The notes: generated by a model from the sequence alone, not told the origin. A stretch of 64,000 nucleotides of DNA from IMGVR_UViG_3300046665_000548:434001-498000, one strand, 5' to 3'; numbered from the stretch's first letter, positions 38,541 to 58,122 are shown. Numbers and translations are program-made.

Positions 38541-41422
38541 ACTCCATCTGTGAGAAGGCCCATATTGGGGGCAGTTTCGATGATGCCAACGCCAATATCG
38601 CCAAGGTCAATGCTGTTGCCGTATTTATCTGTGATAAGTCCGCAGTCAATTATCGGCTTTCGGTACCAACCATCCATCAGACTATACATCTGGATGACTA
38701 CCTTGTTGTTTTCCACATCGTCTTCTAGCACTGCTGTAATTTGCTGAGTGCTGACAATATCCATAATCGCGCGTTCAGCTATCAGTTCTCCATTGTAGAG
38801 AAACTGGCTCTTTGCAATGATGGCATCGCTCTGGGCGCTAATGGTGACTGTGCCGCCAGGACCGCCGTCGTTGATGCTGATGCCGGTACCAGCCGAGAGA
38901 ACTCGCGCGTTGGGGACGTTCTCGCTGCCGTTATCAAGTACGATAAATTTTTCGTTGCCCGGTGAGTTCGGAATAAAAATCGTAGCAAGCTGACCATCGA
39001 CCGTAACCGCGCTGGTTACGCCGCCGCCAACGAAGTTGATCGAAGAAACCGCAGTACCCTTGACGTTGCCTTCGTCGCGAACCTCAAGACCAGAACCGAA
39101 TGCGCTTCCAGATGTGACCATCAACAACTTGCCGTCGTTCTGGCCACCAGTGAAGGAGATAGTTCCAGTACCTTGAACGGCTCCCGTGAGAGTCAGCGTA
39201 ATCGGCTTCGTCTGAAACTTGATCTTCTGGTTAGGCGAATCGTAAGTAACATCGACGCCGAGTTGAGAGCCGGAAATCAAGTTAGTAACGATGCCGCGAA
39301 CTTCGCCAGCATCGAGGTCTGGTATGACCGCAATATTAGCCGTGTCACCGACGACGGTTGCCGTGATTCCGCTTCCGACAAAATTGATAGACTTAACCGC
39401 TGCGATATCGCCCGAGCGAACGCCTTCGTCCAGAATAGTGACGCCGGTAATACGATCTGATGTCGTATTGATTGTAACATCTCGAAGCTTAGAGACTTTG
39501 GCCGTACCTGTGACAGCGCCTGCGAGGTTGATGTTAAATTCGCGGACGCCAAGTTCTACGATGTTGTTTCCCGCATCATAATTGACGGTGACGCCGGTTT
39601 CTGTTTCCAGATTAGAGTTTGCCTCGCGGACTGTTCCCTTGATCGTCGTACCGATTGTGTTACGAACATCGGTGACGGTGATTGCTTGTGGAATGTCAAC
39701 TGTAGCGACACCTCCCGACTGGGAAACGGTGACGCCTGAGCCTGTGAAATTGAGGCTTTGTACGGACTGATCGAGGCCAATAGTGTTCCCGTGATCTTTT
39801 ACGGTGACACCCTTGATGAGGTCAGTAGATGTAAAGATATTGATGTCACCAAGGCGCGATGAATGACCCGTGCCGGTCACTGCGCCAGTAAGATTGACAT
39901 CGAACTCTTTGACGCCGATTTCGAGAACGTTGTTGGTCGCATCGTAATTCGTCGTAATACCGGTTTCGGCAGGCAACGTGACATTCGGATCACGAACAGT
40001 ACCGCGCACAAAGGTGCCGACGATATCCCGGACTTGCGACGGCAACAGTCTGCTGAATGTGAGGTCAACCTGATTTCCGTTTTGGACGGCGGTGATCGCG
40101 TCTCCCAGCAGATTGAATACCTTGACCGTTTCTGGATCACCAAGTGGGGTACCTGCTGTAAGGATTTGGACGCCCTTGATACGGTCCGATGTCGTATTGA
40201 TAACGATATCCTGGAGACGCTTGCTGTGGCCCGTACCTGTGACGGCACCGGTCAGCGTTACGTCGAATTCTCGAACACCAAGCTCGACCGTATTATTTGA
40301 TGCGTCGTAATTAGTCGTGATGCCAGTTTCGGTCTCAAGTTGTGTGTTCTGATCACGAACCGTTCCCTTAACGGTTCCGCCGATCTGATCTCGAACATCA
40401 CGCGCCGTCAGGATAGCCGGGATGTCGATGATCGACACCTCTCCTGTCTGAGTGACGGTTACTCCACTGCCAGTGAAATTTAGGAAGTGAGTGCCATCAA
40501 CAGGGCTTACGTTGACTCCGCTCTTCTGAACCGTGAAGCCGCTTCGGAAATTGCTCGTCGTGTTGATCGTGACATCAGAGAGATGCGAAACAGTAGCGCT
40601 ACCCTGGACAGTACCGGCCAGCGTGATCGTGAAATCTTTCGCTGAAAGGTTGACCTTGCCGCGAGTACCGTCGAAAACCGCGTTAATGCCTTCTTCAACG
40701 TTGTCATCGAATGCAGATGCGAGAATACCAGCCGAACCGTTATTGATCGGAAGATCGCCCAGACGAGCGTTCAGATAGGCTAGATTGATTACGTCTGTCG
40801 GACCAACTGGATTGTTCTCAATCGTCAGAGACTGGGTGATTTCGGCGCGACCGACACGGAGAGCCCAACGATCCTGAGAGAAGAACTCCCATACGTTTTG
40901 GTCGTTATTGTATCGGAACGTTCCTGATACTGGATTGACCGGACGAGTGTTTGTCGTTCCTTGCGGAGCACGGATATAGTCGCTGGTGACAATGAGCGGA
41001 GCGGAGACCTGAACTGCGTCTCCAACAAGAAACTTGTCTTTGCTCTGATAGCTGACGTTCAGACCATTGTTGACCCTAGCACCGAGGGTGAAAAGAGAAA
41101 TCCAATCGGTGCCGTTGTAATATTGAACAAGGCCCTCATCGTATCGGAGCATACCAGGACGAACAGTGGTCGTCGGTGCTCCCTGTGGCAACGTCAAAGA
41201 GTTGCCAGTATAGCTCGCCTTGAAGTATACATGACCGCCAGCGTCACCGATGACGGGAACGACTTCGATTACGCTTCCATCTAAGGGTGTAGCGGTCTGC
41301 AAGTTTTCGATAGCAGCCTTAATGACCGTGAAATTGTCACGGAATTGCTGAGAAGGCTGCGTTACACCTGGAACTGGATAGTTCGGATCGTAAGTTTGTG
41401 GAAGACCCGTATCAATAGCCAT
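38537..41422 (-). CDS. Virion fibre/baseplate-associated protein with about five ~120-aa repeats
   Basis: QPSQQFRDNF N-terminus; repeats VR..(I/V)G...ETG(I/V)T.NYDA.NN.VELGVREF..L.GAVTGT. Confidence 0.78.
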   Translation of the reverse strand: MAIDTGLPQTYDPNYPVPGVTQPSQQFRDNFTVIKAAIENLQTATPLDGSVIEVVPVIGDAGGHVYFKASYTGNSLTLPQGAPTTTVRPGMLRYDEGLVQYYNGTDWISLFTLGARVNNGLNVSYQSKDKFLVGDAVQVSAPLIVTSDYIRAPQGTTNTRPVNPVSGTFRYNNDQNVWEFFSQDRWALRVGRAEITQSLTIENNPVGPTDVINLAYLNARLGDLPINNGSAGILASAFDDNVEEGINAVFDGTRGKVNLSAKDFTITLAGTVQGSATVSHLSDVTINTTSNFRSGFTVQKSGVNVSPVDGTHFLNFTGSGVTVTQTGEVSIIDIPAILTARDVRDQIGGTVKGTVRDQNTQLETETGITTNYDASNNTVELGVREFDVTLTGAVTGTGHSKRLQDIVINTTSDRIKGVQILTAGTPLGDPETVKVFNLLGDAITAVQNGNQVDLTFSRLLPSQVRDIVGTFVRGTVRDPNVTLPAETGITTNYDATNNVLEIGVKEFDVNLTGAVTGTGHSSRLGDINIFTSTDLIKGVTVKDHGNTIGLDQSVQSLNFTGSGVTVSQSGGVATVDIPQAITVTDVRNTIGTTIKGTVREANSNLETETGVTVNYDAGNNIVELGVREFNINLAGAVTGTAKVSKLRDVTINTTSDRITGVTILDEGVRSGDIAAVKSINFVGSGITATVVGDTANIAVIPDLDAGEVRGIVTNLISGSQLGVDVTYDSPNQKIKFQTKPITLTLTGAVQGTGTISFTGGQNDGKLLMVTSGSAFGSGLEVRDEGNVKGTAVSSINFVGGGVTSAVTVDGQLATIFIPNSPGNEKFIVLDNGSENVPNARVLSAGTGISINDGGPGGTVTISAQSDAIIAKSQFLYNGELIAERAIMDIVSTQQITAVLEDDVENNKVVIQMYSLMDGWYRKPIIDCGLITDKYGNSIDLGDIGVGIIETAPNMGLLTDGV

Positions 41423-41443
41423 TAATTAACTACCCCTGGAGAT

Positions 41444-43672
41444 TTAGAGGTATTTATTCGGCTCTAGTAACTGACCGTCGAACACTGTTTGGAAGGTGAT
41501 ATCGGAGCTATCGAACGACGTAATCGTACCATCGAAGGCCGTTTGCTTGACGATCAGATTGACTGTCGCGACGTAGCGGTCGAATGTAAACACGTGTCCA
41601 TCGTTCATTAGCTCGTCATCATGGACCCGCAGCGTCTCAAGAAGATTGGCTCCTTGTCCGGGTTGCAAGTGGGCAATTACGATGGAAGGAACATATCCCA
41701 AGACGCTGGATGGCACATTGCGAACCTGCTCTGCGCGCATCCACAATGGAAGACCTTCCGGCCCGGATGGTCCCAAAGTCGTAGTCTCCAGAAGATTGAC
41801 TGCTGGAAACTGAATATCCTTCGCAAGGTCTTTACGGATGTTTTCAAGGCTGATCGGATAGATGTACTCAATCGACTTCGACTGCGGATAGACGACCTTT
41901 TCTTCTATTGGAGCATTGTTCGTTCGGCTGAAACCACCTGAACCGGTATTAGGATCGTACACGTCTCGATATAGGACCTCATATGCTACGGCCCCGGTTT
42001 GATCACGAACAACCGCAATTTTATGATCTCCCAAAATGAGATCGAGCGAGCCATGATAGTCCGGATTCATAAGATGTGGGCTACCATCACCGCTTGTTGC
42101 GGTCTGGAGGCTCACTCCGTTAGCATTCAACCCGCGCACCACGTATACTCGCGGCTCACGCACCATACCGAAGTTGGCATCGTCTGCTCTGAATAGCATA
42201 TTCGTGTTGATGAAATCTCGGTAGTTCCTAAGAAAGTTATATCGATTAACCACCATCAGTTTCAGACCGATGTCGTAGAACGTGCGAGATGTAATTCTAG
42301 ATTTTAGAGTCAAAGAAAATGTTCTATCTACGAATGTCGGACCAGATTCGGCTCTGACCGTAAAGCTATACTTGCTGTCATAAGTGACAAAGCCGTTGAT
42401 CCCGCGAATTTCGCCAGTGCTTTGCACTATAATCAAACCGGGCGGCAAGCCGCGTGAGCTTGGGGCCATAGAATAGGTTATGACTGCATTATCTTCGCCG
42501 CCAATGATCTGTGCTTCGATCTTCAAGAAGCACGGCTCGGCCGAGTAAATCGTACCTAGATCGGTTTGAGTGATCCAATTGATCTTAGGGGTGGCTTCGA
42601 GTTTACTCGCAAGTTCATACAGTACCTCGATCATAAACGTGAAGACCGTCGTGTTGTCGTTGGTCTTCAATTGAAAGAAATACTGCCCGGCAGGGATCGA
42701 TGGATCGATCATGCCTTCGATCTGATAGCCGTTCAGCTTGAGACCTGTCGGCATACCGCCAAAATATTCACCGATGTCGGGGAGACCCGTAACCTTCTTG
42801 ACGAAAAGCGTCGGATGATCTCCGTCAGGATCGATAACGTCGAGTGTATACGCGAAGCTCTGACCACGCTTCAATCGTGCAAGGCGACGATATTGAATTG
42901 TTGTGTCGGGTAGAGTTTGAAGTGCCGGTAGTGAGCGCGATTCATACGTCGTCGGATAGTCCACACCAGTTACCGCAATACTAAATGTGCGGTCACGCGA
43001 CCGAAGACCGTTGGATGCACGTACAGTGAATCCATAGGTAGTAAGCTCGGGAGGATTCACATTGCCGACCGTGCCCACGATTTCACCGGTCTCTGGAGCG
43101 ATACCAAGTCCAGGCGGCAATGCCCCATTCAATATAGTGTAGGTCAGACGATTAGTCGTATATACCTCAATTACGGAAATAGCCGGAAGAGGATCAAATA
43201 GAATCGATCCCGATCCCTTCGTAAATGAAATCGCGTCTCCGTTCACGACTACACTATTGACATACGTTACTACATTCGTAGGCATAGTAATGAACGCCGT
43301 TCCTGCCGGAACAATCGTCGTTAGTACATCAACCGCGTCTAGAAAATAGGATGCCTGCTCGCCTTCTTGAGACGTTAAAAGAAGAGAGGATGGAGTTTGC
43401 CAATGAGGAACGAAACCTTCATGGGAAATATTGTTGAAGGACGTGAACTCCCGAATTGAGTTACTGGCCGATCCAACGATAAAGACGCGAAGATTAGAAT
43501 TGCCCGTGATAGGAGCGAGGGTAGAAGCGACCACGCCTCGAACGGGCAGTTCGCTATCCACTTGTTGCGTCAGCAAACCGATTGGATCGTTTCCAGACAG
43601 AGAAACCAGAAGGTACGCTGCGGATTCCGTCTCTAAATTGTCATACGTGTTAGTAGCGGAACCTACCGGCAT
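41444..43672 (-). CDS. Baseplate/virion structural protein with putative Ig-like (He_PIG) repeats
   Basis: GALPPGLGIAPETGEIVG and GLPPGLIIVQSTGEIRG; late promoter upstream. Confidence 0.7.
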   Translation of the reverse strand: MPVGSATNTYDNLETESAAYLLVSLSGNDPIGLLTQQVDSELPVRGVVASTLAPITGNSNLRVFIVGSASNSIREFTSFNNISHEGFVPHWQTPSSLLLTSQEGEQASYFLDAVDVLTTIVPAGTAFITMPTNVVTYVNSVVVNGDAISFTKGSGSILFDPLPAISVIEVYTTNRLTYTILNGALPPGLGIAPETGEIVGTVGNVNPPELTTYGFTVRASNGLRSRDRTFSIAVTGVDYPTTYESRSLPALQTLPDTTIQYRRLARLKRGQSFAYTLDVIDPDGDHPTLFVKKVTGLPDIGEYFGGMPTGLKLNGYQIEGMIDPSIPAGQYFFQLKTNDNTTVFTFMIEVLYELASKLEATPKINWITQTDLGTIYSAEPCFLKIEAQIIGGEDNAVITYSMAPSSRGLPPGLIIVQSTGEIRGINGFVTYDSKYSFTVRAESGPTFVDRTFSLTLKSRITSRTFYDIGLKLMVVNRYNFLRNYRDFINTNMLFRADDANFGMVREPRVYVVRGLNANGVSLQTATSGDGSPHLMNPDYHGSLDLILGDHKIAVVRDQTGAVAYEVLYRDVYDPNTGSGGFSRTNNAPIEEKVVYPQSKSIEYIYPISLENIRKDLAKDIQFPAVNLLETTTLGPSGPEGLPLWMRAEQVRNVPSSVLGYVPSIVIAHLQPGQGANLLETLRVHDDELMNDGHVFTFDRYVATVNLIVKQTAFDGTITSFDSSDITFQTVFDGQLLEPNKYL

Positions 43673-43697
43673 TCAACTATCACTCCTCTTGAGCAAG

Positions 43698-43705
43698 TAT
43701 TTAGC
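43698..43705 (-). promoter_or_regulatory. Late promoter GCTAAATA
   Basis: Upstream of GAGGAG and the structural operon. Confidence 0.55.
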
Positions 43706-43739
43706 GGTTCGAAACGCTAAATCTGCACATGGAGTGAGC

Positions 43740-44474
43740 TTAAAGGCTCAAGCCTCTATCTTGAGCTTGCGTCCTAGCATCACGAAGGCGATCTAGGTAA
43801 CCCAGCGCCCTGAGGCTCTTGAAGGCAAGGTTCTCTGTTGAGAATTCACCACCATCCCGGAGTCCGCTTTGGCGCATTTCTCGTAGGCGGCTCATCAGCG
43901 CGGAAAGTCGATCCATATCTGGCTGGCCATCTAACAGAGCATCTATCTCGTCTGCTAGATGTTCGGTTTTGGCGAGCACGGCGGCGTCGTCATAGGACGG
44001 TTCGACAGGTTCGGGATGATTCAACCAGCTACCGCGAAGAATACTGAATACCCCATTGGAGTAAGCGGGTGAGCGCTGGTCTTCGACGTACATCTCGATC
44101 TTGAAGCCACGCACCGAAATGTCGTGGCTGACGTTCCAGAGGGTTTTCTTTGCAGAGAAAAAGTTCTCCGCCAACTTCGGACACGTGGTTTTGCTGTAAT
44201 CCACGATGAGATGGACATCGATGTCACTCAAATCGGTGTAATTGTATGCGGCGTTCGATCCGGTAACCACAACGTCGGACAACTTCAATTCAGGCATTTC
44301 GAGAAAATCGTAAAAAGCCATCGCTGCTTTAAGCAGGCGCGCTCGCACGGGTAGCAACATATCGTCGCTTTCGTCCCACAAGCCTGGGTTCAAGCGATCA
44401 TGGAATGCGATGTTTTTGGAGACGGCTGCCGGATCAATCCGTGCCTCAAGCTCAATTTCTCGACTGCGAATCAT
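43740..44474 (-). CDS. Pol-beta-superfamily nucleotidyltransferase
   Basis: VVVTGSNAAYNYTDLSDIDVHLIVD (GS..DxD) plus IEMYVED third acid. Confidence 0.75.
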   Translation of the reverse strand: MIRSREIELEARIDPAAVSKNIAFHDRLNPGLWDESDDMLLPVRARLLKAAMAFYDFLEMPELKLSDVVVTGSNAAYNYTDLSDIDVHLIVDYSKTTCPKLAENFFSAKKTLWNVSHDISVRGFKIEMYVEDQRSPAYSNGVFSILRGSWLNHPEPVEPSYDDAAVLAKTEHLADEIDALLDGQPDMDRLSALMSRLREMRQSGLRDGGEFSTENLAFKSLRALGYLDRLRDARTQAQDRGLSL

Positions 44475-45728: not shown

Positions 45729-45758
45729 AACGCGCGGCTCTGGGGCCGCGCGTTTTTT
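45729..45758 (+). terminator. Intrinsic terminator
   Basis: AACGCGCGGC-tctggg-GCCGCGCGTT followed by TTTT. Confidence 0.85.
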
Positions 45759-45774: not shown

Positions 45775-45782
45775 GATAAATA
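45775..45782 (+). promoter_or_regulatory. Late promoter GATAAATA
   Basis: 24 nt upstream of ATG 45807. Confidence 0.55.
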
Positions 45783-45806: not shown

Positions 45807-46379
45807 ATGCTTGATATCGAAAAACTAGAAGACTCCCCGCATCTTCTCGATCTGCTGGTTCAGATGGAAGACGTGCTCGACTCCATGGACGTGTACGTTT
45901 TTAAGAACTGGATCGATGGAGAGATTGTTGAAGGGCCGAAGGTTCGACGCTATTGGCTCGACATGACCCTCAAATATCCTTACGACAAGATGCCCGATCC
46001 GCGTGCAGGTCTTCGTCTGCTCAAGCACGGCGTGCGAGTTGATTTTAGCAAAGCCCACGAAGACGACAGCGGAGACGCAAAACCCGTCGAGGGCGAAGGC
46101 GAGAAGGACAGCATGGTCTGGCTCGTTCACGTTTCAATTCCTCGTCGTCTGATTGTTGAAATCAATGCTGGTCAGCTTGACTTCTATGATGATGAAATCG
46201 ACAGCGAGGACGTTGAGGACGCACAGGACTCCGGCGTAACCGACGAGACCGGATATACGGCTCCCGAAGAAGGTGGCCTGCCTCCTCCTGGTGGACCCGA
46301 AATGGCCCCACCAGCGCCGGGAGGTCCAGGTGGCCCCCCACCGGCACAACCGCCAATGGGAGGACCGCCGCGTGGCTAA
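45807..46379 (+). CDS. Conserved-looking hypothetical protein with acidic and Pro/Gly-rich tail
   Basis: YVFKNWIDGEIVEGPKVRRYW...MPDPRAG; C-terminal PPPGGP tract. Confidence 0.75.
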   Translation: MLDIEKLEDSPHLLDLLVQMEDVLDSMDVYVFKNWIDGEIVEGPKVRRYWLDMTLKYPYDKMPDPRAGLRLLKHGVRVDFSKAHEDDSGDAKPVEGEGEKDSMVWLVHVSIPRRLIVEINAGQLDFYDDEIDSEDVEDAQDSGVTDETGYTAPEEGGLPPPGGPEMAPPAPGGPGGPPPAQPPMGGPPRG

Positions 46380-47088
46380 TCTATTTGAAGGAATGCGCCA
46401 GGGCGATCTGGAGGACATGCTCCTCCCGCTCATTTCTGTGGATGAATACGAAAGCAAAATCGATAAGAGTGCGGTCGTGATCGGTTTTTACGTTGGCGAC
46501 CAAGATGCGGCAGAAGATTTGAACAGGTTTATCCAACGGTCTCCCGTTGAAATCCTCGACACTGAAATCTCGCCCGCGCCAGATCAACAGGGATACTATA
46601 TGGTATTCGTTGAATTGTTGAACAATGACAAACTGGCGGGGAATATCGAAGACCTATTGAAGGAGATTCAGCCTCTCAGTCAGGTCGATAATTGGCAGAT
46701 GCATATTCGCGGGGAGCCCGATCTTGTTCCTTTCTCTGACAAAGCGATCTCTAAGCATGTATTGCCGCCATCCGAAGAAAAAGTTGAGGAAAGCATTCTT
46801 GCATTCTTGACCAAGAGCGTTCTTCGTGATGCACATGTAGACAATAATCAAGTGGTCCTGGAGGGTGATTCGGGTCGGTTTGAGCTTAGCTATGTTGGGC
46901 TTGGACCTTATCAGGAGACGATGTGCGAACACGGCCTAGAAGAAGCCGCTGTTGGATTGAGTCTGCAAGACGCTGCTCGCAGTTCTAAAATCCAGACAAT
47001 GCTTGGCGAAGGTTGGTCTGTATCTCGGGTTGGTGATTGCGATGTCTTGCATCGCCTTGACACTGATATGGTCTTAATTCTATCATAA
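46372..47088 (+). CDS. Conserved-looking hypothetical protein
   Basis: GTG start with GGAGG; ISVDEYESKI...YMVFVE. Confidence 0.7.
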   Translation: MANLFEGMRQGDLEDMLLPLISVDEYESKIDKSAVVIGFYVGDQDAAEDLNRFIQRSPVEILDTEISPAPDQQGYYMVFVELLNNDKLAGNIEDLLKEIQPLSQVDNWQMHIRGEPDLVPFSDKAISKHVLPPSEEKVEESILAFLTKSVLRDAHVDNNQVVLEGDSGRFELSYVGLGPYQETMCEHGLEEAAVGLSLQDAARSSKIQTMLGEGWSVSRVGDCDVLHRLDTDMVLILS

Positions 47089-47140: not shown

Positions 47141-47506
47141 ATGTTGGAATCGGGCGTACTCGATTACCCAGTCACGTGGCGACACATGAAGTCAGGGTTC
47201 CTTCTAATGGGAAAGCCAAAGGGCTTTTTTCCAGATATCACCGATCTTGTCCAAAGGGGCGTTGAGCCACCGATCTCCGACGAAGAGAAAATGTTCAACG
47301 TTGTGATTTTTCCAGAACCAAATTTGATTTCCGAACTGCGTGAATGGTTGTCAGAAAATACAGACATGCAGGTCGGAATGTTCGCCCGATTTTCATGGGT
47401 CACACAGAAATATCGTATCGACCGAGAGTATCAAGGTGTACGTTTTGTGTTCGAAGATATGAACGTCGCGGTTCTTTTTAAGCTGTTTTGGGCACAAGGT
47501 TCTTAA
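47141..47506 (+). CDS. Small paralogue-family protein
   Basis: LREWLSEN...FVFEDMNVAVLFKLFWA. Confidence 0.65.
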   Translation: MLESGVLDYPVTWRHMKSGFLLMGKPKGFFPDITDLVQRGVEPPISDEEKMFNVVIFPEPNLISELREWLSENTDMQVGMFARFSWVTQKYRIDREYQGVRFVFEDMNVAVLFKLFWAQGS

Positions 47507-47518
47507 TGCCTGGGTTTT

Positions 47519-47526
47519 GCTAAATA
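47519..47526 (+). promoter_or_regulatory. Late promoter GCTAAATA
   Basis: Heads the TM + PAS two-gene unit. Confidence 0.55.
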
Positions 47527-47560
47527 CCTGCAAGTAGAGCAGAAAAGAGTAAAACCCCCA

Positions 47561-47812
47561 GTGTTTGAAAGTATCATTCAGAAATTGTTAGAAGCCATGC
47601 TTGCGGGTGGACCGCAGGCGTTTGTTGCTATTCTGGCTCTTATTGTTGCTCTCCTTCTATTGGAGAGGCGTCGTCTCGTTGCCGACATCCAGAAGAAAGA
47701 TGACAAGATCGAAAAGATCATTGATGACTATTACAAGGGCAACCTAAGTCTGTCTGAAGCGCTGACCCATCTGAAGCTAGTTCTGTACGAAATCAAAGGC
47801 AGAATCCAGTAA
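47561..47812 (+). CDS. Single-TM coiled-coil protein (holin-like architecture)
   Basis: AFVAILALIVALLLL followed by ERRR and a heptad-like C-terminus. Confidence 0.6.
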   Translation: MFESIIQKLLEAMLAGGPQAFVAILALIVALLLLERRRLVADIQKKDDKIEKIIDDYYKGNLSLSEALTHLKLVLYEIKGRIQ

Positions 47813-47825
47813 TCGGCGTACGAGG

Positions 47826-48677
47826 ATGTGGTCCATGTTTTTCAAAACAAAAAAGAGACAGAAGGAAGCTCTGACAGCCGCGAAGATGGCAGAGAGCCAA
47901 CTCACTTTGATCCAGGCCGCAACCGATACTGCGGAAGCCGCACGAGATGTCGCGGCTTCGCTAAAATCAAAAATCGATGATGCGTTTACGCAGCTAGAAA
48001 ACACCGCGCGCATTATTAACGATGCTCTTTTTCTTTGTAGCGAGGATGGGAGCATTGTTACGAGCAATACGGCGGCGACCGCCATGTTTGGATACGACGC
48101 TCAAAACGTTCTTGAAGTATTTGACATGGCTGGCGCACCGCTCCCTGATGCGGCAACTCTTTGGGATCATATTCAACACACCTCGTCCTGGATGCCATCT
48201 TCAAGAAGACCTCTTCGATGCAAAAGGGATAATGATCTTATTTGGGTCGAACCGAAAATGTCTCGCCTTGTGTGGTCTGACGGTTCCAAAAGCATCCTCG
48301 TCTTAATCCGAAGCATTGACAGCCTCGTAAAGATTCAAAAATCCGCTCAAGAGGCGCGCAAGCGATATCGCGCTCTAATGGACAAGTCGGTAGATGGAAT
48401 ATTGGTCATTCAGCACGATTTGATCATTGCCGCAAATCCCGCCGCTCGTAAAATTTTCGGTTATGAAATTCAGGAACTCCTCGGTCAGCCGATAAGTTTT
48501 CTGTTTCATGAAAGCGATCACGATTTGATCATCGAACACGAGGTTGTCCACACTATCGTAAAGGGTGTGCATGATGACAATACAACCGTGGATTTACTTT
48601 TCACGGCGGTGCCCATTGAGTGGCACGATGAACCTGCCAAATTAGTGACGGTTCGCGACACCTTCACTCCGAAATAA
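47826..48677 (+). CDS. Tandem PAS-domain protein without an output domain
   Basis: INDALFLCSEDGSIVTSNTAATAMFGY and YRALMDKSVDGILVIQHDLIIAANPAARKIFGYEIQELLGQPISFLF...LVTVRD then stop. Confidence 0.82.
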   Translation: MWSMFFKTKKRQKEALTAAKMAESQLTLIQAATDTAEAARDVAASLKSKIDDAFTQLENTARIINDALFLCSEDGSIVTSNTAATAMFGYDAQNVLEVFDMAGAPLPDAATLWDHIQHTSSWMPSSRRPLRCKRDNDLIWVEPKMSRLVWSDGSKSILVLIRSIDSLVKIQKSAQEARKRYRALMDKSVDGILVIQHDLIIAANPAARKIFGYEIQELLGQPISFLFHESDHDLIIEHEVVHTIVKGVHDDNTTVDLLFTAVPIEWHDEPAKLVTVRDTFTPK

Positions 48678-48724: not shown

Positions 48725-49858
48725 ATGCAATTGATTCATATCCCAGAGTTGGTACATCTGCGCAATACCTTCCAGAAGTCGGGCTTCGATATCCGACTGG
48801 TTGGTGGTTGTGTGCGCGATATGCTGATGGACATTCAGCCCAAGGATATTGATCTGTGCACGGATGCCTCGCCTGACGAGCAGATCGCTCTGTATAAGGC
48901 TGCCGGTGTTCGGTTTGCTGAGACCGGTCTCCAGCATGGCACGATCACTGCAATCCTGCCGGAGGGCGTCTACGAGATCACGTCCCTGCGTACCGAGACG
49001 GAGCACGATGGCCGCCACGCGACCGTCAACTATACCCGTGACTGGAACGAGGACCTGGGCCGTCGCGATCTGACCATCAACGCGATGGCTATGACCTTCG
49101 AGGGGCAACTGCTGGACCCGTTCGGCGGGCAAGAGGATTTGAAGGCCCGTAGGCTGCGTTTCGTCAATGATCCGGATCAACGTATGCAGGAAGATTACCT
49201 GCGTATTCTGCGCTGGCTGCGGTTTCAGGGTCGAATTGCCCCCGGTCAGCAACTGGACCAGGATACCTGCGCCGCCGCAATGCGCAATGCCAAGGGTCTG
49301 GAGCGTATCTCGCGTGAGCGTGTCTGGTCCGAGGTCTCCCGGATGCTGTCCACGGACGGCGGTCCGGAGATGCTGGATGCTATGTGGAATTTGGGTCTGG
49401 CCGATCCATGCGGTCTGCCACGCGGGTATAGCGCCGAGGTTCGGCGCGTGCATCAGTATACGCGCGATCCCGTTGCACTGATGGCTACCTTCATCGGTGA
49501 TTCGGAAACGATGGCCGCGCTGGCTCGCGCGTGGAAGTGGAGCACCGATGAATCGAAGCTGGCGCAGTTTCTGACCAAGAATCGTTTCCGCAAGGACTTG
49601 GACTTCAAGCGGATGGTCGCGCTGAACGGCGTCACCAAGGATGCGATTTTTGCCCTGTCTATCCTGGAGGATCGCAGGGTGGAGGGTGAGGCCGTGATGG
49701 GCTGGGACGTACCCGTGTTCCCGGTGACCGGCAACGATCTGATCGCGGCTGGCATTCAGCAGGGTAAACAGATTGGTGAGACCAAGACTCGTCTGATGAA
49801 CCTGTGGGCCGATTCGGAGTTCAATATGTCCAAGGACGACCTGATGGGGGCAATCTAA
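48725..49858 (+). CDS. cca: tRNA nucleotidyltransferase (CCA-adding enzyme, class II)
   Basis: [42 protein letters not shown]. Confidence 0.92.
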
Positions 49859-49993
49859 CCATGATGCGTTTCCTGCGACGCTTGCAGCGCTATTTCAAGA
49901 AGGAAGATCGTTCGTCTATAGCGTACATGACGCCAATCGTTGGCGTCATGCTCGTTATCAACGGCCGAAGCATCACCCCAGCAGCGACCAGAT

Positions 49994-50257
49994 ATGAACG
50001 AACCATTTCTCATCGAATTGGAACGTGATCCGTCTCTCTATGGGGAGATTAACGCGCAATTTCGAATATTCGAAATGCGTTGGGTCGAGGTCACTCGTAT
50101 AAAAATGATGGAGGAATGGTGCGCCTCCATGTTTGGTGTCGATCCACGCATGGAGAACGATAAGCTTCCCATCGAGCGCTGGAGTAGAATGGGACCACGC
50201 TGGTATTTTAGGGACGAGACCGACGCCCTTGTCTTCAAAATGATGTGGACGACTTAA
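49994..50257 (+). CDS. Small paralogue-family protein
   Basis: MEEWCASMFG...WYFRDETDALVFKMMW. Confidence 0.7.
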   Translation: MNEPFLIELERDPSLYGEINAQFRIFEMRWVEVTRIKMMEEWCASMFGVDPRMENDKLPIERWSRMGPRWYFRDETDALVFKMMWTT

Positions 50258-52688: not shown

Positions 52689-53114
52689 TTATTCCGGTAG
52701 AAGATCGCTCCAAAGCGGCGTCTCGATGTTGAAATTCGGACGGTGATCGTCGTAGGCGCTGATTCGAACCAGCATCCTGACCGGCTTATCCAGCTTACGG
52801 GCCATTTCCATTTCCATGCGCATGCCCTCAGAACGATCCCATCCGTCGAGAGGAAAAATCCAATACTCATCGCACTTTTCCACCATCTTGACCGAATAGT
52901 TGAGCCAAAACTGGCGATCCGAATGGGCGGTGCCATATTCGGGGATGTAATCCATGAGATTGGGAGAGACGACGAAGCCAAGCCCGTTATTGTGAATCCA
53001 AAAAGCAGCGCGCCGCGTCTCATCGAGACGAATGTCGATGACTGACCGATCAGGGTCATAATAGGGCGCACCCAAGAGGATGAAGGGGCGGTTCGGAATA
53101 GATGATACAGGCAT
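52689..53114 (-). CDS. DUF1937/nucleoside deoxyribosyltransferase-like protein
   Basis: LLGAPY...VVSP...KCDEYWIFPLDGWDRSEGMRMEMEMA. Confidence 0.6.
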   Translation of the reverse strand: MPVSSIPNRPFILLGAPYYDPDRSVIDIRLDETRRAAFWIHNNGLGFVVSPNLMDYIPEYGTAHSDRQFWLNYSVKMVEKCDEYWIFPLDGWDRSEGMRMEMEMARKLDKPVRMLVRISAYDDHRPNFNIETPLWSDLLPE

Positions 53115-53170
53115 GAGACCTCAGAGAGACGGAAGAATTTTGGCGACGATTGACGGGGCTCGCCGCATCA

Positions 53171-53467
53171 TCACGCATCCGCCTGATTGAAAAGGATTTC
53201 GGTCATGGCGGCGACCTCAGGCGATGTGGCCTTGGCCCATGCAAGAGCCCGGTCGCGTTGAGTGGAGGTACGAGAGAGTTCGATAAGAGCTTGGGGGATG
53301 CCCATCATCACATGAGGGCCAAATGATTCGCCTTTAATCGAGATACCGGCCAGGATCATGGCGGCAAGGCGGTGGGATTCTTTCTCGTTCGCGTCCAAGA
53401 TGCGCATATGCGGCATCTTGCGGCGAGCGGATTCTACCAATTCGGCAGGTGTCGGACTTTTCTCCAT
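53171..53467 (-). CDS. Hypothetical protein
   Basis: ATG 53467 lies 5 nt after a -10 box. Confidence 0.55.
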   Translation of the reverse strand: MEKSPTPAELVESARRKMPHMRILDANEKESHRLAAMILAGISIKGESFGPHVMMGIPQALIELSRTSTQRDRALAWAKATSPEVAAMTEILFNQADA

Positions 53468-53472
53468 GGCTA

Positions 53473-53500
53473 AGAATACCATGGAGAATCATTTTGGCAA
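53473..53500 (-). promoter_or_regulatory. Early promoter TTGCCA-N16-TATTCT
   Basis: Recurring motif. Confidence 0.65.
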
Positions 53501-53507
53501 GCGTTTT

Positions 53508-54206
53508 TTAGCTAGCAAAAAGCGCTTCGAGCTTGTCTGCATCCATCCAGCCGCAGACCTTCAGGACGAATGCCGTTTCCTCACCGGCAACCATACCCCA
53601 GGCATTGTGATCCTGGAAAAAGTATGCGGGCGCGGCCAGATCAACGATCTTATCGTCAATCAGCGCCTTGGTCTTCTCGCCGGGGGCAATAACGAACGAA
53701 AGGGTAACGTGTCCGGCATTAGCGAGGCCCTGGCCCGGTGAATCGTAGTGGGGCACGTGCACGCCGTGTGCGGGCAGCATGATGATACGAACGATATCGA
53801 TATCGGTGAACGGAAGGCTTTCAACGAACGCCTTGATTTCCGGAATGTGGCTGAGCATCTGCGTGCGCCAAACCCATTTTCCACGCAGGGTGCCACGGTA
53901 GATAAACTGTCCGTTGCGTGTGGGCTTGTTACCCGGAATTTCAGTCAGGCTGAAACCATGCGCACACGGTAGTTCGCGCTGATCGAGATGGAAACGACCA
54001 TTAATGTCGTAGTCGCCACGAGTTACGCGATCCAAATCGGTTTGCGATACTATTTCGAATGGCGGAGCGAAAAAATACGCCTCGGATGCAGCCTGTCTTT
54101 CACTCAAAAGAGCAGGAGCCAAATCTTTTACCTCAGTGATAACCGAGGCTGGAATTTCAACGTTCAAAGGTTGATATAGCGGAAGTTCAGACATTGAGTT
54201 CTCCAA
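53508..54206 (-). CDS. AspH-like oxygenase-fold protein (distal His possibly degenerate)
   Basis: IVRIIMLPAHG...PHYD...FFQDHNAWG; likely start MSELPLY at 54194. Confidence 0.55.
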   Translation of the reverse strand: MENSMSELPLYQPLNVEIPASVITEVKDLAPALLSERQAASEAYFFAPPFEIVSQTDLDRVTRGDYDINGRFHLDQRELPCAHGFSLTEIPGNKPTRNGQFIYRGTLRGKWVWRTQMLSHIPEIKAFVESLPFTDIDIVRIIMLPAHGVHVPHYDSPGQGLANAGHVTLSFVIAPGEKTKALIDDKIVDLAAPAYFFQDHNAWGMVAGEETAFVLKVCGWMDADKLEALFAS

Positions 54207-54218
54207 GAGAGTTATGTC

Positions 54219-54226
54219 TATTTATT
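54219..54226 (-). promoter_or_regulatory. Late promoter AATAAATA
   Basis: Between the terminator and the GGAG RBS. Confidence 0.5.
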
Positions 54227-54233
54227 CGCAACG

Positions 54234-54262
54234 AAAAAAGGCGGGGAAAATCCCCGCCCTTT
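54234..54262 (-). terminator. Intrinsic terminator
   Basis: GGCGGGGA-ttt-TCCCCGCC followed by TTTTTT on the minus strand. Confidence 0.8.
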
Positions 54263-54280
54263 GTTTTGATCGAACGCTGT

Positions 54281-54898
54281 TTACTTGCGAATGTATTCTG
54301 GTTTGACCCGCGCCTGCGCGCGGTCTGCGATAGCTTGAAGCGTGCTGGAAATCTGCTGGTACGCGTAGATGTAGAAGCTGCGAACTGGGTCCTTGAGCAG
54401 TGTCCAAAGTCCAACAATCGGCCAGAATGTCATCCACGTAGTGATGCGGGCCTTGTGCTGATATAGATGCAGCGGGTAGGCGAATTGATTGCCATTGGTC
54501 ACGTATCGAACGGCCGAATCGATATAGCTGTTCTTCTCCGATTCACTGAGTTGGTCGAACGTCTTTCCATTTTGGAGAAGCATCGTATCGATATTCTCCT
54601 CGTAGTCGTGGTTCAGATTCACCGCGAAACGCCACCACTTGTAGATTCCTACTCCGATCCCCGAGATCAAGAACAGGACAGCGTATCCGAGCGCAGTGGT
54701 CGGATGCTGATAGGCTAGAGTGAATGGATGAAAGTCTGTGCACGTTTGAAGGAAGAGCAGGGTCACCAAGACGGTGAAGCTCGCCCATCCAGCATGACTG
54801 TTTTCGACCAGATACAGAAGACAGGCGGCCCACGCCAACAGGAACACGGACCACATAAAGAAGTTGCCGAAGAATTCGAATGCAGGGACGAATCCCAT
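54281..54898 (-). CDS. Multi-pass membrane protein
   Basis: Three to four hydrophobic segments. Confidence 0.7.
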   Translation of the reverse strand: MGFVPAFEFFGNFFMWSVFLLAWAACLLYLVENSHAGWASFTVLVTLLFLQTCTDFHPFTLAYQHPTTALGYAVLFLISGIGVGIYKWWRFAVNLNHDYEENIDTMLLQNGKTFDQLSESEKNSYIDSAVRYVTNGNQFAYPLHLYQHKARITTWMTFWPIVGLWTLLKDPVRSFYIYAYQQISSTLQAIADRAQARVKPEYIRK

Positions 54899-55462
54899 TT
54901 AAAGTCTCCTAATGGTTGGAATTTCAGATTTAAGACCAATTTCGGTTAGCACTCTTGCGGCGATTTTGCTAGGGGCTTCATCATCTCCCAGCATCTCTAT
55001 TACTGGCATGTGCTTCCGACCTAGCTCCAATAGTTCAAGCGAAATTTCGTTAGCCTCTTCCTCGCTCTGGTAACGCCCGATAGGGTCGTAAGCGTGCGCG
55101 CGATGGAGGAAGAAAGTCAGGCCGCCGAGAGCCTTCCAATGTTCGGCCACGAGCGTATCAAAAATGGCAGGATATCGGCCGGGACAGTTACGCAGATTGT
55201 AATAACTGGAAAGTATGAGCGGGCTATCTGTCACGATGACATCCACCTCTCCCATGAGGCTTTCCATGTTCTTTAGCTGCTTGCCGTAGATATACGGCTG
55301 GCACGTCAGAGCTTTTTTGCGGTGTTCGAATACGAAGCTTTTAGCAACTTCGTTGCAGTATTCCACGCTGACACCCTTGACTCGGAGGTCACAAGTCGTG
55401 CGCATTGCCGCAATACTTTTGCCCGCGCTCGGTGCCCCCAGGATGTTGACAATAATCGTCAT
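54899..55462 (-). CDS. P-loop kinase, NadR/AAA_28-like
   Basis: LGAPSAGKS Walker A, EVAK, IVTDSPLILSSYY, RYQSEEEA. Confidence 0.75.
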   Translation of the reverse strand: MTIIVNILGAPSAGKSIAAMRTTCDLRVKGVSVEYCNEVAKSFVFEHRKKALTCQPYIYGKQLKNMESLMGEVDVIVTDSPLILSSYYNLRNCPGRYPAIFDTLVAEHWKALGGLTFFLHRAHAYDPIGRYQSEEEANEISLELLELGRKHMPVIEMLGDDEAPSKIAARVLTEIGLKSEIPTIRRL

Positions 55463-55507
55463 GAAAGAGCTTTCTGTTAAAAACCAAATTCTAGTCTCGT
55501 GATTCGC

Positions 55508-55536
55508 TTGAAAGCAAATTGAAACTGGAGTATACT
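55508..55536 (+). promoter_or_regulatory. Sigma70-type promoter TTGAAA-N17-TATACT
   Basis: ATG 55542 lies 5 nt after -10. Confidence 0.55.
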
Positions 55537-55541
55537 GAAGT

Positions 55542-56003
55542 ATGACCTTTCCTATTCTTGCACAGCACGACGCCATTGGTTGGGACTTTGACGAGACTTT
55601 GGCTCGTCATGGGAACAGCGAGGCGATGCACGCCTTCATTAAGGCGCACCCCGATAAGCGCCATGTCATCGTGACCTTCCGTACGCACGGAATGCAGGAT
55701 GGCGTGTTTGATGAGCTTTCGGTGTATCCGAATGCGCCTGGGCCGGAAGCGTTCGAAGCCGTGCTGAATATCGAGGATGAGGCTTGGGAGAGGTTTTCCG
55801 CTCATCGTCACGCCCGTCAGCGCGGGGAGATCGGTGCCGCGTTAACCGAGGCCGAAACCTATTATCTGGAATGGAAGGGCGCGATGTGCCGCAAGCATGG
55901 ACTAACCGTGCTCGTGGACGATATGGTTGATCGCGTGAAGGACGGCTGCGAGAAGAACGGGATCGTCTACATCAACCCGGACGACCTGATCCCAAATGGC
56001 TAG
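55542..56003 (+). CDS. HAD-superfamily hydrolase
   Basis: IGWDFDETL (DxD), IVT, K...VLVDD. Confidence 0.7.
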   Translation: MTFPILAQHDAIGWDFDETLARHGNSEAMHAFIKAHPDKRHVIVTFRTHGMQDGVFDELSVYPNAPGPEAFEAVLNIEDEAWERFSAHRHARQRGEIGAALTEAETYYLEWKGAMCRKHGLTVLVDDMVDRVKDGCEKNGIVYINPDDLIPNG

Positions 56004-56223
56004 ATATTTCGTGGTGCGGCCGGATCAAGTTAAGGCGTACGCCCCTATCCGTGATATGCACCATGAGCGCGACGGCTGGAGAATCATGACCGAGGTCAAA
56101 ACCCGGAAGGGTACTCGGTATGGCAGGGTGCTAGAACAAGAGGCAAACGGCAATATACGCCACGCTCGTTTTACGAGCGAGGCTGAGGCCGCTGCGGCAA
56201 TCCCTGAGGTATCTCGCCGTTAG
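55996..56223 (+). CDS. Hypothetical protein
   Basis: Coupled to the HAD gene. Confidence 0.5.
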   Translation: MARYFVVRPDQVKAYAPIRDMHHERDGWRIMTEVKTRKGTRYGRVLEQEANGNIRHARFTSEAEAAAAIPEVSRR

Positions 56224-56942
56224 GTCATCAGCTTGGTCACGAGCGCGTCCAGATCGGCTGCGCGCTCTGACGCACGACCGTGTAGCACATGGTCGAAGCT
56301 TTCATCACGGATAGATTCTGCGCTCTCCAGATTGCTGAGGACCGTAGTTGCGTAAGAGGACTCTGCGATGTCGCCAATGTCGATAACCTGACCACTGGTT
56401 CCAATCACGACCAGCACGTCTTCCTTCGTGAGCGATTCGATAATCTTCCACAGCTTGGGGTATTCTGGCGCGATCTCGTTGAAGAACACGACATTTGGCT
56501 TCACGCCCTTGAGGGAATTGCAGGCCGGGCAACGACCCTCTTTTGCGGACCACTCGGCATAGCCAATGTCCCAGGTAGGACAGCCCATGGCGGTGCACTG
56601 CATCTTCTTGAGATCGCCATGCGCGTGGATGACGTTCGCGCACCCGGCGCGCTCGAAGAGATCGTCAATATTCTGAGTGATTACCTTGGCGTCGTAGCGC
56701 TTTTGCCAGTCCGCAACCACGAAATGCGCCTTATTGGGCTCAACATTCGCCAGTTGGGTGCGCCGCTCATTGTAGAAACGGTGAACAAGTTCCCGATTCT
56801 GCTTCCACGTCAATAGGTTAGCAACAGCATCAACGCTGTGGTTCTCCCAAAGACCATCCTTGTCGCGAAAGGTTTGGATACCCGAATCAGCACTGATTCC
56901 GGCCCCGGTGAAGACGACTAGATTGCGGTGAGTTCTATCCAT
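56220..56942 (-). CDS. Sirtuin (Sir2/CobB-like NAD-dependent deacylase)
   Basis: TGAGISADSGIQTFR, TQNIDDL, HAHG, KPNVVFF, IGTSG, CxxxC/CxxC Zn sites. Confidence 0.93.
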   Translation of the reverse strand: MDRTHRNLVVFTGAGISADSGIQTFRDKDGLWENHSVDAVANLLTWKQNRELVHRFYNERRTQLANVEPNKAHFVVADWQKRYDAKVITQNIDDLFERAGCANVIHAHGDLKKMQCTAMGCPTWDIGYAEWSAKEGRCPACNSLKGVKPNVVFFNEIAPEYPKLWKIIESLTKEDVLVVIGTSGQVIDIGDIAESSYATTVLSNLESAESIRDESFDHVLHGRASERAADLDALVTKLMT

Positions 56943-58110: not shown

Positions 58111-58122
58111 CAGTCTCTCTCG

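What the first reader, a model, noticed from the sequence alone, without database searches (positions are those of the whole stretch)
47519..48677. Late two-gene unit: single-TM protein plus output-less tandem PAS sensor
Seen: a TAAATA motif precedes an 83-aa single-TM/coiled-coil gene and, 13 nt later, a 283-aa protein. That protein has an N-terminal helical region and two PAS domains, and it stops at VRDTFTPK, exactly where a HisKA or GGDEF output domain normally begins. Established: PAS arrays are sensory and dimerisation modules of alphaproteobacterial cell-cycle kinases (CckA, DivL, PleC, PdhS) and cyclases; T4 uses membrane partners to time lysis. Inference: this is either a phage sensory module that times lysis through a holin-like partner, or a decoy that binds host PAS kinases and rewires the CtrA/c-di-GMP circuit. 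I know of no characterised phage system of this form.
Basis: partly seen in the sequence, partly recalled or inferred. Interest (0 to 1): 0.78.

Follow-up and report, generated by a model that had tools for sequence, protein, structure and literature searches.

The report
Huge-phage membrane-anchored PAS sensor pair
A 608-kb phage carries a small membrane protein and an enzyme-less double-PAS "sensor" protein that are kept as neighbours behind a conserved promoter motif in related huge phages and probably bind each other, but what they sense and control is still unknown.

Summary
TAAATA (47521-47526) lies 40 nt upstream of an 83-aa gene for a single-TM protein (47561-47812). After a 13-nt gap comes a 283-aa protein (47826-48677) made of a long N-terminal helix and two canonical PAS domains, with no output domain. 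A CCA-adding enzyme gene starts 47 nt after the stop, so no output domain is hidden there.

New here:
- The pair is a conserved module of uncultivated huge phages (complete records of 424-608 kb) and of Sinorhizobium phage Phosso. It was absent from 185,579 cellular genomes.
- The PAS gene follows the small gene in 17 of 17 testable loci.
- TAAATA sits 26-44 nt upstream of the small gene in 19 of 19 loci, across 28-64% GC.
- None of 63 family representatives exceeds 439 aa. Most carry a third PAS domain, which the window's lineage has lost.
- The most conserved parts are the small protein's cytoplasmic hairpin and the PAS protein's N-helix. A controlled complex prediction places the interface there, but with weak support (0.39 against 0.00 for controls).

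Best reading: a split, membrane-tethered PAS sensor-adaptor that is probably expressed late and acts through protein contacts. Neither a holin/antiholin role nor a host-kinase decoy role is shown. The CtrA-specific decoy is disfavoured. No published description was found.

The parts
47521..47526 (+). TAAATA, core of a T4-late-like promoter, 40 nt upstream of the small gene
   Evidence: 11 of 16 window copies lie within 80 nt upstream of same-strand genes, against 0-2 for other permutations. Present 26-44 nt upstream of the small gene in 19 of 19 loci. Function as a promoter and late timing are inferred.
47561..47812 (+). Gene for an 83-aa bitopic membrane protein: short N-terminal segment, one TM helix (about residues 18-35, nt 47612-47665), then a cytoplasmic helical hairpin (residues 36-83)
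   Evidence: ORF. Hydropathy and the ERRR flank. Family of 53 clusters, with I53 Y57 G60 N61 A67 L71 V74 L75 invariant. Found only in viral contigs and none of 185,579 cellular genomes. No Pfam, PHROG or PADLOC family.
47826..48677 (+). Gene for a 283-aa output-less tandem PAS protein (alternative start 47835)
   Evidence: Pfam PAS_9/PAS/PAS_8/PAS_4 above cut-offs. AF2 model with pLDDT 85. Foldseek best matches are the FixL PAS-A/B dimer, PpsR, DosP and the Brucella LOV-PAS construct. Close two-PAS relatives of 277-290 aa.
47835..48020 (+). N-terminal long helix (residues 4-65), the most conserved part and the predicted docking site for the small protein
   Evidence: Invariant S24 Q25 L28 A31 A32 T35 A39. 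Mean pairwise identity 46%, against 33-35% for the PAS cores. Interface residues 10-50 in the complex prediction.
48024..48314 (+). PAS1 (residues 67-163)
   Evidence: AF2 secondary structure. The profile's best solved relatives by sequence are the heme-PAS domains of DosP and FixL, but no conserved histidine is present.
48396..48659 (+). PAS2 (residues 191-278). The protein ends 5 residues later.
   Evidence: Pfam best stretch 190-278. AF2 model.
47141..47506 (+). Conserved 121-aa gene directly upstream, of unknown function. It is a possible third member of the block.
   Evidence: Homologue in the same position in 14 of 19 loci. AF2 pLDDT 82, with no fold match in PDB or AFDB clusters.
45807..47088 (+). 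Context: two genes matching PHROG 'virion structural protein' families 12928 and 13138, which head the conserved five-gene block
   Evidence: PHROG E 2.8e-37 and 9.2e-42. Syntenic in 15 of 19 loci. Relatives in the Rak2, 121Q, PA5oct and Atu_ph07 jumbo phages. In the PA5oct record the first gene of the equivalent pair is annotated 'structural protein, ESI-MS/MS'.
48725..49858 (+). Context: CCA tRNA nucleotidyltransferase gene, starting 47 nt after the PAS stop
   Evidence: Pfam PolyA_pol 2.3e-31 and phrog_2244 1.4e-60. It leaves no room for a hidden output domain.

Best explanation
The two genes encode a split, membrane-tethered PAS sensor-adaptor of huge phages. They are transcribed together from their own TAAATA promoter. 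That promoter is probably late, because the same motif precedes virion genes. The genes are probably translated in a fixed ratio, since the gaps between them run from an overlap to about 30 nt. The 83-aa protein inserts with its N-terminus out and its C-terminus in. Its strongly conserved cytoplasmic helical hairpin packs against the long N-terminal helix of a dimer of the PAS protein. This holds two (in most relatives three) cytoplasmic PAS domains at the inner face of the membrane. The assembly resembles the TM-linker-PAS part of a one-piece sensor kinase, made in two pieces and without any catalytic output. The PAS domains would read a cytoplasmic cue. That cue is probably a small ligand or a protein partner rather than His-ligated heme or a LOV-type flavin adduct. 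The signal would pass on by protein-protein contact through the conserved helical bundle to an unknown target. Shown: gene structure, PAS identity, absence of an output across the family, strict gene linkage, the conserved promoter motif, and the conservation pattern. Inferred: the complex and its geometry (weak prediction plus conservation), the topology, late timing, and sensing. The target process is unknown. A late membrane event such as lysis timing is the most plausible guess.
For: Linkage: the PAS gene follows the small gene in 17 of 17 loci with enough downstream DNA. The two are adjacent or overlapping in 15 and separated by one inserted ORF in 2. This includes cultured Sinorhizobium phage Phosso, where the small protein is 57% identical and the PAS protein 23%. 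Promoter: TAAATA is present in 19 of 19 loci and also precedes tail and virion genes in the window. Complex: ipSAE 0.39 against 0.00 for three controls, rated 'weak support' by the tool, with 91-95% contact agreement between runs. The interface is PAS residues 10-50 with small-protein residues 47-83. These are the most conserved segments of both proteins, at 46% and 76% mean pairwise identity. The PAS cores reach 33-35% and the small protein's N-terminus 34%. Most invariant residues fall in the interface lists. No output anywhere: all 63 representatives that match the N-helix profile end to end are 113-439 aa, and 20 of 20 members show only PAS families in Pfam. Histidine kinases occur in only 2 of 13 other genomes that carry the pair. 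Lead only: language-model neighbours of the N-helix include TM-linker-PAS segments of sensors such as ArcB, at low scores.
Against: The complex score is in the range the tool calls weak, meaning more often wrong than right without a good prior. It was run with my own alignments and as a 2+2 job outside the calibration. Helices are easily packed together by predictors. No ligand, cofactor or target is identified. Sensing is inferred only from the general role of PAS domains. Late timing is inferred from a motif. No transcript data were available, because no sequencing run could be listed. The TM segment is moderately conserved (52%), so the small protein may do more than anchor.
Confidence: 0.5

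Rival explanations
1. Holin plus cytoplasmic antiholin. The 83-aa protein is the phage's hole-forming holin. The PAS protein binds its cytoplasmic tail, as T4 RIII binds holin T, and delays or triggers lysis according to the energy or redox state of the cell.
For: The small protein has one TM segment and a highly charged cytoplasmic C-terminus, and its promoter motif is late-type. ESM-Atlas feature neighbours include a viral 'Holin' cluster (0.91) and Holin_BhlA clusters (0.89). No other holin was recognised near the GH19 endolysin candidate. T4 RIII is a precedent for a cytoplasmic antiholin (my knowledge).
Against: There is no match to any holin family in Pfam or PHROGs. PF10960 finds nothing in the genome even at E<=10. 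No endolysin or spanin lies next to the pair in any of 19 loci. Candidate peptidoglycan hydrolases lie at about 7, 101 and 255 kb, against 481 kb for the pair. The strongest constraint is on a structured cytoplasmic hairpin (76% identity) across phages of 28-64% GC, which is unusual for holins. Holins diverge fast (my knowledge). Atlas scores near 0.9 are leads only.
Confidence: 0.2
2. Decoy of host signalling. The output-less PAS array forms heterodimers with host PAS kinases or cyclases at the membrane (for example CckA, DivL, PleC) and rewires CtrA or c-di-GMP control.
For: PAS arrays dimerise, and stand-alone PAS proteins can act on kinases in trans. Caulobacter MopJ is an example (PMC4432633, PMC4620464). 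An HWE kinase elsewhere in this genome and the Sinorhizobium host of Phosso fit an alphaproteobacterial host for some members.
Against: The family spans loci of 28-64% GC, which implies diverse hosts. It is inherited within a conserved phage gene block, not recently captured. Similarity to cellular proteins is limited to the generic PAS S-box, and only 6 proteins of similar length reached E<=0.001. A decoy should track host-specific dimer interfaces, yet the best-conserved surface is the one predicted to bind the phage's own small protein.
Confidence: 0.1
3. Assembly or virion-associated factor. The PAS domains serve only as protein-binding modules. They tether a morphogenesis step, or a packaged protein, to the membrane, and nothing is sensed.
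For: In 14-15 of 19 loci the pair ends a five-gene block headed by two homologues of PHROG virion structural protein families, with the same promoter motif. In the PA5oct record the first gene of the equivalent pair is annotated 'structural protein, ESI-MS/MS'.
Against: PA5oct and Atu_ph07 keep the two structural genes without the pair. In Phosso the pair lies about 225 kb from that structural gene, so the link is not obligatory. The PAS domains are canonical signalling-type S-box PAS.
Confidence: 0.12
4. Decaying remnant of a captured sensor kinase with no present function.
For: The window's protein has lost a PAS domain relative to most of the family.
Against: The open frames are intact, and invariant residues persist across very divergent phages. 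The promoter motif is conserved in 19 of 19 loci, and no member has any kinase remnant. The two-PAS form is itself conserved at 75-80% identity in four relatives.
Confidence: 0.03

Closest known systems
Membrane-anchored multi-PAS sensor kinases (FixL, ArcB, DosP-type PAS tandems)
   Same: Tandem canonical PAS domains joined by helical linkers. These are the best structural and sequence matches. The N-helix resembles the juxtamembrane linker that precedes the first PAS domain (lead only).
   Different: There is no DHp/HATPase, GGDEF, EAL or any other output in any family member. The membrane anchor is a separate polypeptide. No heme-ligating histidine is conserved.
PpsR-AppA (Rhodobacter sphaeroides)
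   Same: A multi-PAS protein whose long helical linker is gripped by a partner's helical domain. PpsR is among the top fold matches.
   Different: PpsR has an HTH output and AppA is a soluble BLUF/SCHIC sensor. Here the partner is an 83-aa membrane protein and there is no DNA-binding domain.
Stand-alone PAS regulator MopJ of Caulobacter (PMC4432633, PMC4620464)
   Same: An output-less PAS protein that acts by protein-protein contact on other signalling proteins.
   Different: MopJ has a single PAS domain, is cellular, and has no dedicated membrane partner. No sequence relationship was shown here.
Phage-encoded PAS receptor VqmA-Phage of vibriophage VP882 (PMC8284805)
   Same: A phage-encoded PAS protein used to read the state of the host or its community.
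   Different: VqmA-Phage is PAS plus HTH, belongs to a temperate phage, and controls the lysis-lysogeny switch. Here there is no HTH, the phages are huge and probably lytic, the assembly is membrane-tethered, and the promoter is late-type.
T4 holin T with antiholins RI and RIII; BhlA-type holin-like peptides
   Same: A small single-TM protein with a charged soluble domain and a late-type promoter. A cytoplasmic partner that binds the tail would parallel RIII.
   Different: No sequence or profile similarity. No lysis-gene neighbourhood. T4 T has a large periplasmic domain and the opposite topology (my knowledge).
Small membrane-protein regulators of sensor kinases (MgrB, SafA, MzrA)
   Same: Short bitopic proteins that work by binding a signalling partner at the membrane (my knowledge).
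   Different: Those bind host kinases through TM or periplasmic parts. Here the conserved contact is a cytoplasmic hairpin binding a co-encoded PAS protein.

Membership tests
PAS domain superfamily | Profile match above the curated threshold | tested here: met
   PAS_9 68.6 bits (cut-off 27), PAS 64.1 (22.6), PAS_8 48.7 (21.8), PAS_4 30.7 (23.1), in two stretches. All 20 family members match.
PAS domain superfamily | Five-stranded antiparallel sheet flanked by helices, twice in tandem | tested here: met
   AF2 model with pLDDT 85. Foldseek E 1e-11 to the FixL PAS-A/B dimer, PpsR and DosP.
Sensor histidine kinase | DHp (HisKA/HWE/HisKA_2/HisKA_3) plus HATPase_c domain | tested here: not met
   Pfam finds none in 20 members. 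No N-helix-matching representative exceeds 439 aa. The next gene starts 47 nt after the stop.
GGDEF/EAL c-di-GMP enzymes | GGDEF or EAL catalytic domain | tested here: not met
   No such Pfam hit. The only related hit is the PAS-like 'Diguanyl_cycl_sensor' domain, below cut-off in the window protein.
Heme-PAS (FixL/DosP type) | Conserved proximal histidine on the F-alpha helix | tested here: not met
   No invariant or nearly invariant His in the family. The F-alpha region is the most variable part. Similarity to DosP and FixL lies in the generic S-box.
LOV domain | Flavin-adduct cysteine in the NCRFL motif on E-alpha | tested here: not met
   The motif is absent. The only frequent Cys (85% of rows) is Cys70 on the first strand of PAS1.
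Holin | Small membrane protein with at least one TM segment and a charged C-terminus | tested here: met
   83 aa, hydrophobic residues 18-35, K/D/E/R-rich tail. These features are not specific to holins.
Holin | Membership of a described holin family | tested here: not met
   No Pfam or PHROG hit. PF10960 gives no match in the genome at E<=10. There is only language-model feature proximity.
Holin | Genomic linkage to an endolysin or spanin | tested here: not met
   None in 19 loci. Hydrolase candidates lie more than 220 kb away. Lysis genes of large phages can be scattered, so this is weak evidence.
Holin | Lethal, timed membrane permeabilisation | not testable with these tools
   Needs expression and lysis assays.
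i-spanin (Rz type) | N-in/C-out topology with a periplasmic coiled coil and a lipoprotein partner | tested here: not met
   ERRR follows the TM segment, so the C-terminus is predicted to be cytoplasmic. The partner gene encodes a PAS protein with no signal peptide or lipobox.
T4-type late promoter | TATAAATA -10 element upstream of late genes | tested here: inconclusive
   The core TAAATA is strongly position-biased and conserved and precedes virion genes. The full octamer is not enriched. gp55/gp33 dependence and timing were not tested.
VqmA-type phage receptor | PAS domain fused to a DNA-binding HTH | tested here: not met
   No HTH domain in any member.

The most novel reading that the evidence does not exclude
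Huge lytic phages carry a genuine sensory device. A PAS array is clamped to a holin-like membrane protein, reads the host's cytoplasmic state (energy, redox or a metabolite) late in infection, and gates the lysis clock or another late membrane event. That would be the first lysis-timing system controlled by a sensory domain, and it would be conserved across phages of very different hosts.
Probability: 0.2. Interest if true: 0.85.

Novelty: new variant of a known kind. Interest (0 to 1): 0.62.

Why it matters
The known cases of phages sensing host state are mostly in temperate phages deciding between lysis and lysogeny, such as VqmA-Phage and arbitrium. This is a conserved PAS module with no enzymatic or DNA-binding output. 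It belongs to the largest known phages, appears to be expressed with virion genes, and has a dedicated membrane partner. If it senses something, it shows that huge lytic phages monitor the cell they are consuming, and it gives a defined two-protein system for finding out what they monitor. One member sits in a cultured phage of a harmless soil bacterium (Phosso on Sinorhizobium meliloti), so the question can be tested directly. The work also yields a strongly conserved promoter core (TAAATA) for this phage lineage.

Tried and rejected
1. Hidden or frameshifted output domain: rejected. The gap to the CCA-adding enzyme gene is 47 nt.
2. Family members with outputs: none among 63 representatives.
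3. A phage-encoded kinase as the missing output. This genome has a PAS-PAS-HWE kinase about 280 kb away with no similarity to the PAS protein. Only 2 of 13 other genomes that carry the pair have any HWE or HisKA domain. Rejected as a general partner.
4. Heme or LOV cofactor signatures: not conserved.
5. Holin family membership: no hit.
6. Defence-system models (PADLOC): no hit.
7. The 588-aa neighbour against the 590-aa gene next to the pair in Phosso: unrelated.
8. Fold of the conserved 121-aa upstream protein: confident model, but no match in PDB or AFDB clusters.
9. tblastn of the small protein against the phage collection returned nothing, although Phosso encodes a 57%-identical copy. That negative is therefore unreliable and was ignored.
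10. Sequencing runs for transcript evidence: none was listed.
11. Literature: no description of a PAS and membrane-protein pair in phages. The main text of the jumbo-phage comparative overview does not contain the word 'PAS'.
I rebuilt the alignments without them.

Full report
WHAT IS THERE

The window is bases 434001-498000 of a 607,744-bp IMG/VR virus record, estimated complete.

- The region holds an 83-aa ORF (47561-47812, GTG start). After a 13-nt gap comes a 283-aa ORF (47826-48677).
- A start at Met4 of the second ORF (47835) has better ribosome-binding-site spacing and is the public gene call of 280 aa. This does not change anything below.
- TAAATA lies at 47521-47526, 40 nt before the GTG.
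- The next gene (48725-49858) starts 47 nt after the stop. It is a CCA tRNA nucleotidyltransferase (PolyA_pol 2.3e-31, phrog_2244 1.4e-60). No output domain is hidden by a frameshift.

THE TWO PROTEINS

- The 283-aa protein matches four PAS families above their curated cut-offs, in two stretches.
- An AlphaFold2 model built on a 20-sequence family alignment has mean pLDDT 85. It shows helix 4-65, PAS1 67-163, linker helix 165-187 and PAS2 191-278.
- Foldseek finds tandem-PAS structures first: the FixL PAS-A/B dimer, PpsR, DosP and the Brucella LOV-PAS construct.
- The small protein has one hydrophobic stretch (about residues 18-35) followed by ERRR. This predicts an N-out, C-in topology with about 48 cytoplasmic residues.
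- The small protein matches no Pfam, PHROG or PADLOC family.

THE PAIR IS A CONSERVED MODULE OF HUGE PHAGES

- The small protein defines a family of 53 clusters, many on contigs of 280-520 kb.
- A profile scan found 18 loci in IMG/VR, on contigs up to 578 kb, and none in 185,579 cellular genomes.
- In every locus with enough downstream DNA (17 of 17) the PAS partner follows on the same strand. The two genes are adjacent or overlapping in 15 loci. One inserted ORF separates them in L008 and L012.
- One short contig (L022) keeps only the partner's N-terminal helix, which then runs into HNH/NUMOD-like sequence.
- The cultured Sinorhizobium phage Phosso (469 kb) has the same pair. Its small protein is 57% identical. 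Its PAS protein is 23% identical and has 434 aa.
- In 14-15 of 19 loci the pair ends a five-gene block. The block holds two homologues of PHROG virion structural protein families, a protein of about 120 aa with unknown function, the small protein and the PAS protein.
- Those structural genes place the phage in the wider Rak2, 121Q, PA5oct and Atu_ph07 jumbo-phage assemblage.
- PA5oct and Atu_ph07 keep the two structural genes without the pair. In Phosso the pair lies elsewhere in the genome.
- Loci carrying the pair range from 28% to 64% GC, so their hosts are diverse.

THE PROMOTER MOTIF IS REAL

- Of 16 TAAATA copies in the window, 11 lie within 80 nt upstream of a same-strand gene start. 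About 6% of strand positions are of that kind. Other permutations of the same six bases give 0-2, apart from the overlapping ATAAAT with 7.
- The motif precedes the tail and virion genes at 35.5-44.5 kb and the structural gene at 45807.
- TAAATA lies 26-44 nt upstream of the small gene in all 19 loci, whatever the base composition. The pair therefore has its own conserved promoter.
- That the promoter is late is inferred from its likeness to the T4 late element and from the genes it precedes. The full T4 octamer is not enriched, and no transcript data could be obtained.

NO OUTPUT DOMAIN ANYWHERE IN THE FAMILY, AND A LOST THIRD PAS

- A profile of the N-terminal 110 residues was searched against 1.84 billion representatives. 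It found 63 proteins that match from their first residues. All are 113-439 aa.
- Longer hits match only the generic PAS part.
- Pfam finds only PAS families in 20 of 20 members.
- Most members (51 of 72 in the tree) carry a third PAS domain. The window's nearest three-PAS relative (L008, 408 aa) has the same CCA-enzyme gene downstream.
- The window sits in a well-supported clade of five two-PAS proteins nested among three-PAS ones. The tree needs at least eight changes of state. Some short rows may be truncated gene calls.
- The protein therefore stops where relatives continue with another PAS domain, not with an enzyme.
- Four relatives at 75-80% identity keep the two-PAS form.

WHERE THE CONSTRAINT LIES, AND THE PREDICTED COMPLEX

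Mean pairwise identity by region:

| Protein | Region | Identity |
|---|---|---|
| Small protein | Cytoplasmic residues 47-83 | 76% |
| Small protein | TM segment | 52% |
| Small protein | N-terminus | 34% |
| PAS protein | N-helix | 46% |
| PAS protein | PAS cores | 33-35% |

- A 2+2 complex prediction scored 0.39 against 0.00 for all three controls. The tool rates this as weak support.
- Contacts run between PAS residues 10-50 and small-protein residues 47-83.
- Most invariant residues of both families lie in those lists: S24 Q25 L28 A31 A32 T35 A39 in the PAS protein and Y57 G60 N61 A67 L71 L75 in the small protein.
- Strict linkage, the conservation pattern and the prediction are separate observations that point the same way. 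They are not fully independent, because the prediction used the same family alignments. None of them is a measurement.

COFACTORS

- By sequence profile the nearest solved domains are heme-PAS domains of DosP and FixL. The similarity is in the generic S-box.
- No histidine is conserved, and there is no LOV cysteine motif. The only frequent cysteine is on the first strand of PAS1.
- His-ligated heme and LOV chemistry are therefore unlikely for the family. Non-covalent ligands cannot be judged.

FUNCTION

I read the pair as a split, membrane-tethered PAS sensor-adaptor that works through protein contacts. My confidence in this architecture and mode of action is about 0.5.

- Holin/antiholin version. 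It rests only on general features and on language-model neighbours. No holin family matches. No lysis gene is nearby in any locus. The candidate peptidoglycan hydrolases of this genome lie at about 7, 101 and 255 kb, against 481 kb for the pair.
- Host-kinase decoy version. In its CtrA-specific form it fits poorly with a module inherited within phages of very different GC content, and with a best-conserved surface that faces the phage's own partner.
- Phage-encoded kinase as partner. This genome has a PAS-PAS-HWE kinase. It cannot be the general partner, because only 2 of 13 other genomes carrying the pair have any such domain.
- Assembly-linked role. The gene block suggests it, but the block is not obligatory.

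WHAT IS KNOWN

- Searches of the held literature found no description of such a pair in phages. The main text of the jumbo-phage comparative overview does not contain the word 'PAS'.
- BFVD shows that PAS histidine kinases (for example in Atu_ph07) and short PAS-only proteins exist in phages. I know of none of these that has been characterised.
- The closest characterised analogues are VqmA-Phage (PAS plus HTH; PMC8284805) and the cellular stand-alone PAS regulator MopJ (PMC4432633).
- I rate the finding as a new variant of a known kind, with interest 0.62. Phosso offers a direct experimental route.

Noticed in passing
L027:1324-2820 (+), i.e. G000:C1 about 200.6-202.1 kb, outside the window: The same phage genome encodes a 498-aa PAS-PAS-HWE histidine kinase (HWE_HK 2.7e-28). 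It is unrelated in sequence to the window's PAS protein. HWE kinases are typical of Alphaproteobacteria, which hints at the host. Atu_ph07 also has a PAS histidine kinase (BFVD hit).
   Followed up: partly
window 47141-47506 (+), window 49940-50257 (+), L027:507-827 (-): Small proteins share a C-terminal pattern, roughly G..F.F.D..DA..FKL.W. This looks like a multi-copy paralogue family in this genome. The copy at 47141 is syntenic upstream of the pair in 14 of 19 loci. Its AF2 model is confident but has no fold match.
   Followed up: partly
L022:1174-2154: In one short IMG/VR contig the PAS partner gene keeps only its N-terminal helix and then continues into HNH/NUMOD-like sequence. An HNH endonuclease gene lies upstream and a terminase gene downstream. 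This may be a mobile-element insertion or replacement.
   Followed up: no
L007, L009, L010, L011 and L017, about 25-45 nt upstream of the small gene: In several relatives TAAATA sits in the loop of a GC-rich inverted repeat followed by a T-run. That looks like a terminator hairpin of the upstream gene with the promoter core in its loop. The window itself has only a weak version of this.
   Followed up: no
window 45729-45754 and 45777-45782: A strong intrinsic-terminator-like hairpin (11-bp stem, T-run) is followed immediately by TAAATA and the first structural gene (45807). This marks the start of the conserved block as a separate transcription unit.
   Followed up: no
window 35502-44474 (-): A run of large tail and virion genes (1012, 961, 742 and 244 aa, with hits to minor tail protein and virion structural protein PHROGs). 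TAAATA lies 11-34 nt before three of them and about 90 nt before the fourth.
   Followed up: partly
window 52689-59346 (-): An auxiliary nucleotide/RNA gene set: a protein like nucleoside 2-deoxyribosyltransferase, a thymidylate kinase-like protein, a Sir2-family protein (phrog_2162, 7.9e-58) and a T4 RnlA-like RNA ligase (phrog_562, 3.7e-65). No tRNA genes were found in the window despite the CCA-adding enzyme.
   Followed up: no
L030:1378-1989 (G000:C1 about 101.5-102.1 kb) and G000:C1:6817-7080: Candidate endolysins of this phage: a 203-aa GH19-like protein and a Hydrolase_2 (SleB-like) protein. No obvious holin lies next to the GH19 gene.
   Followed up: partly
search tool behaviour: tblastn of the 83-aa protein against the phage collection returned no match, although Phosso encodes a 57%-identical homologue. 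The cause is probably low-complexity masking. Negatives from that search mode for this protein are unreliable.
   Followed up: yes
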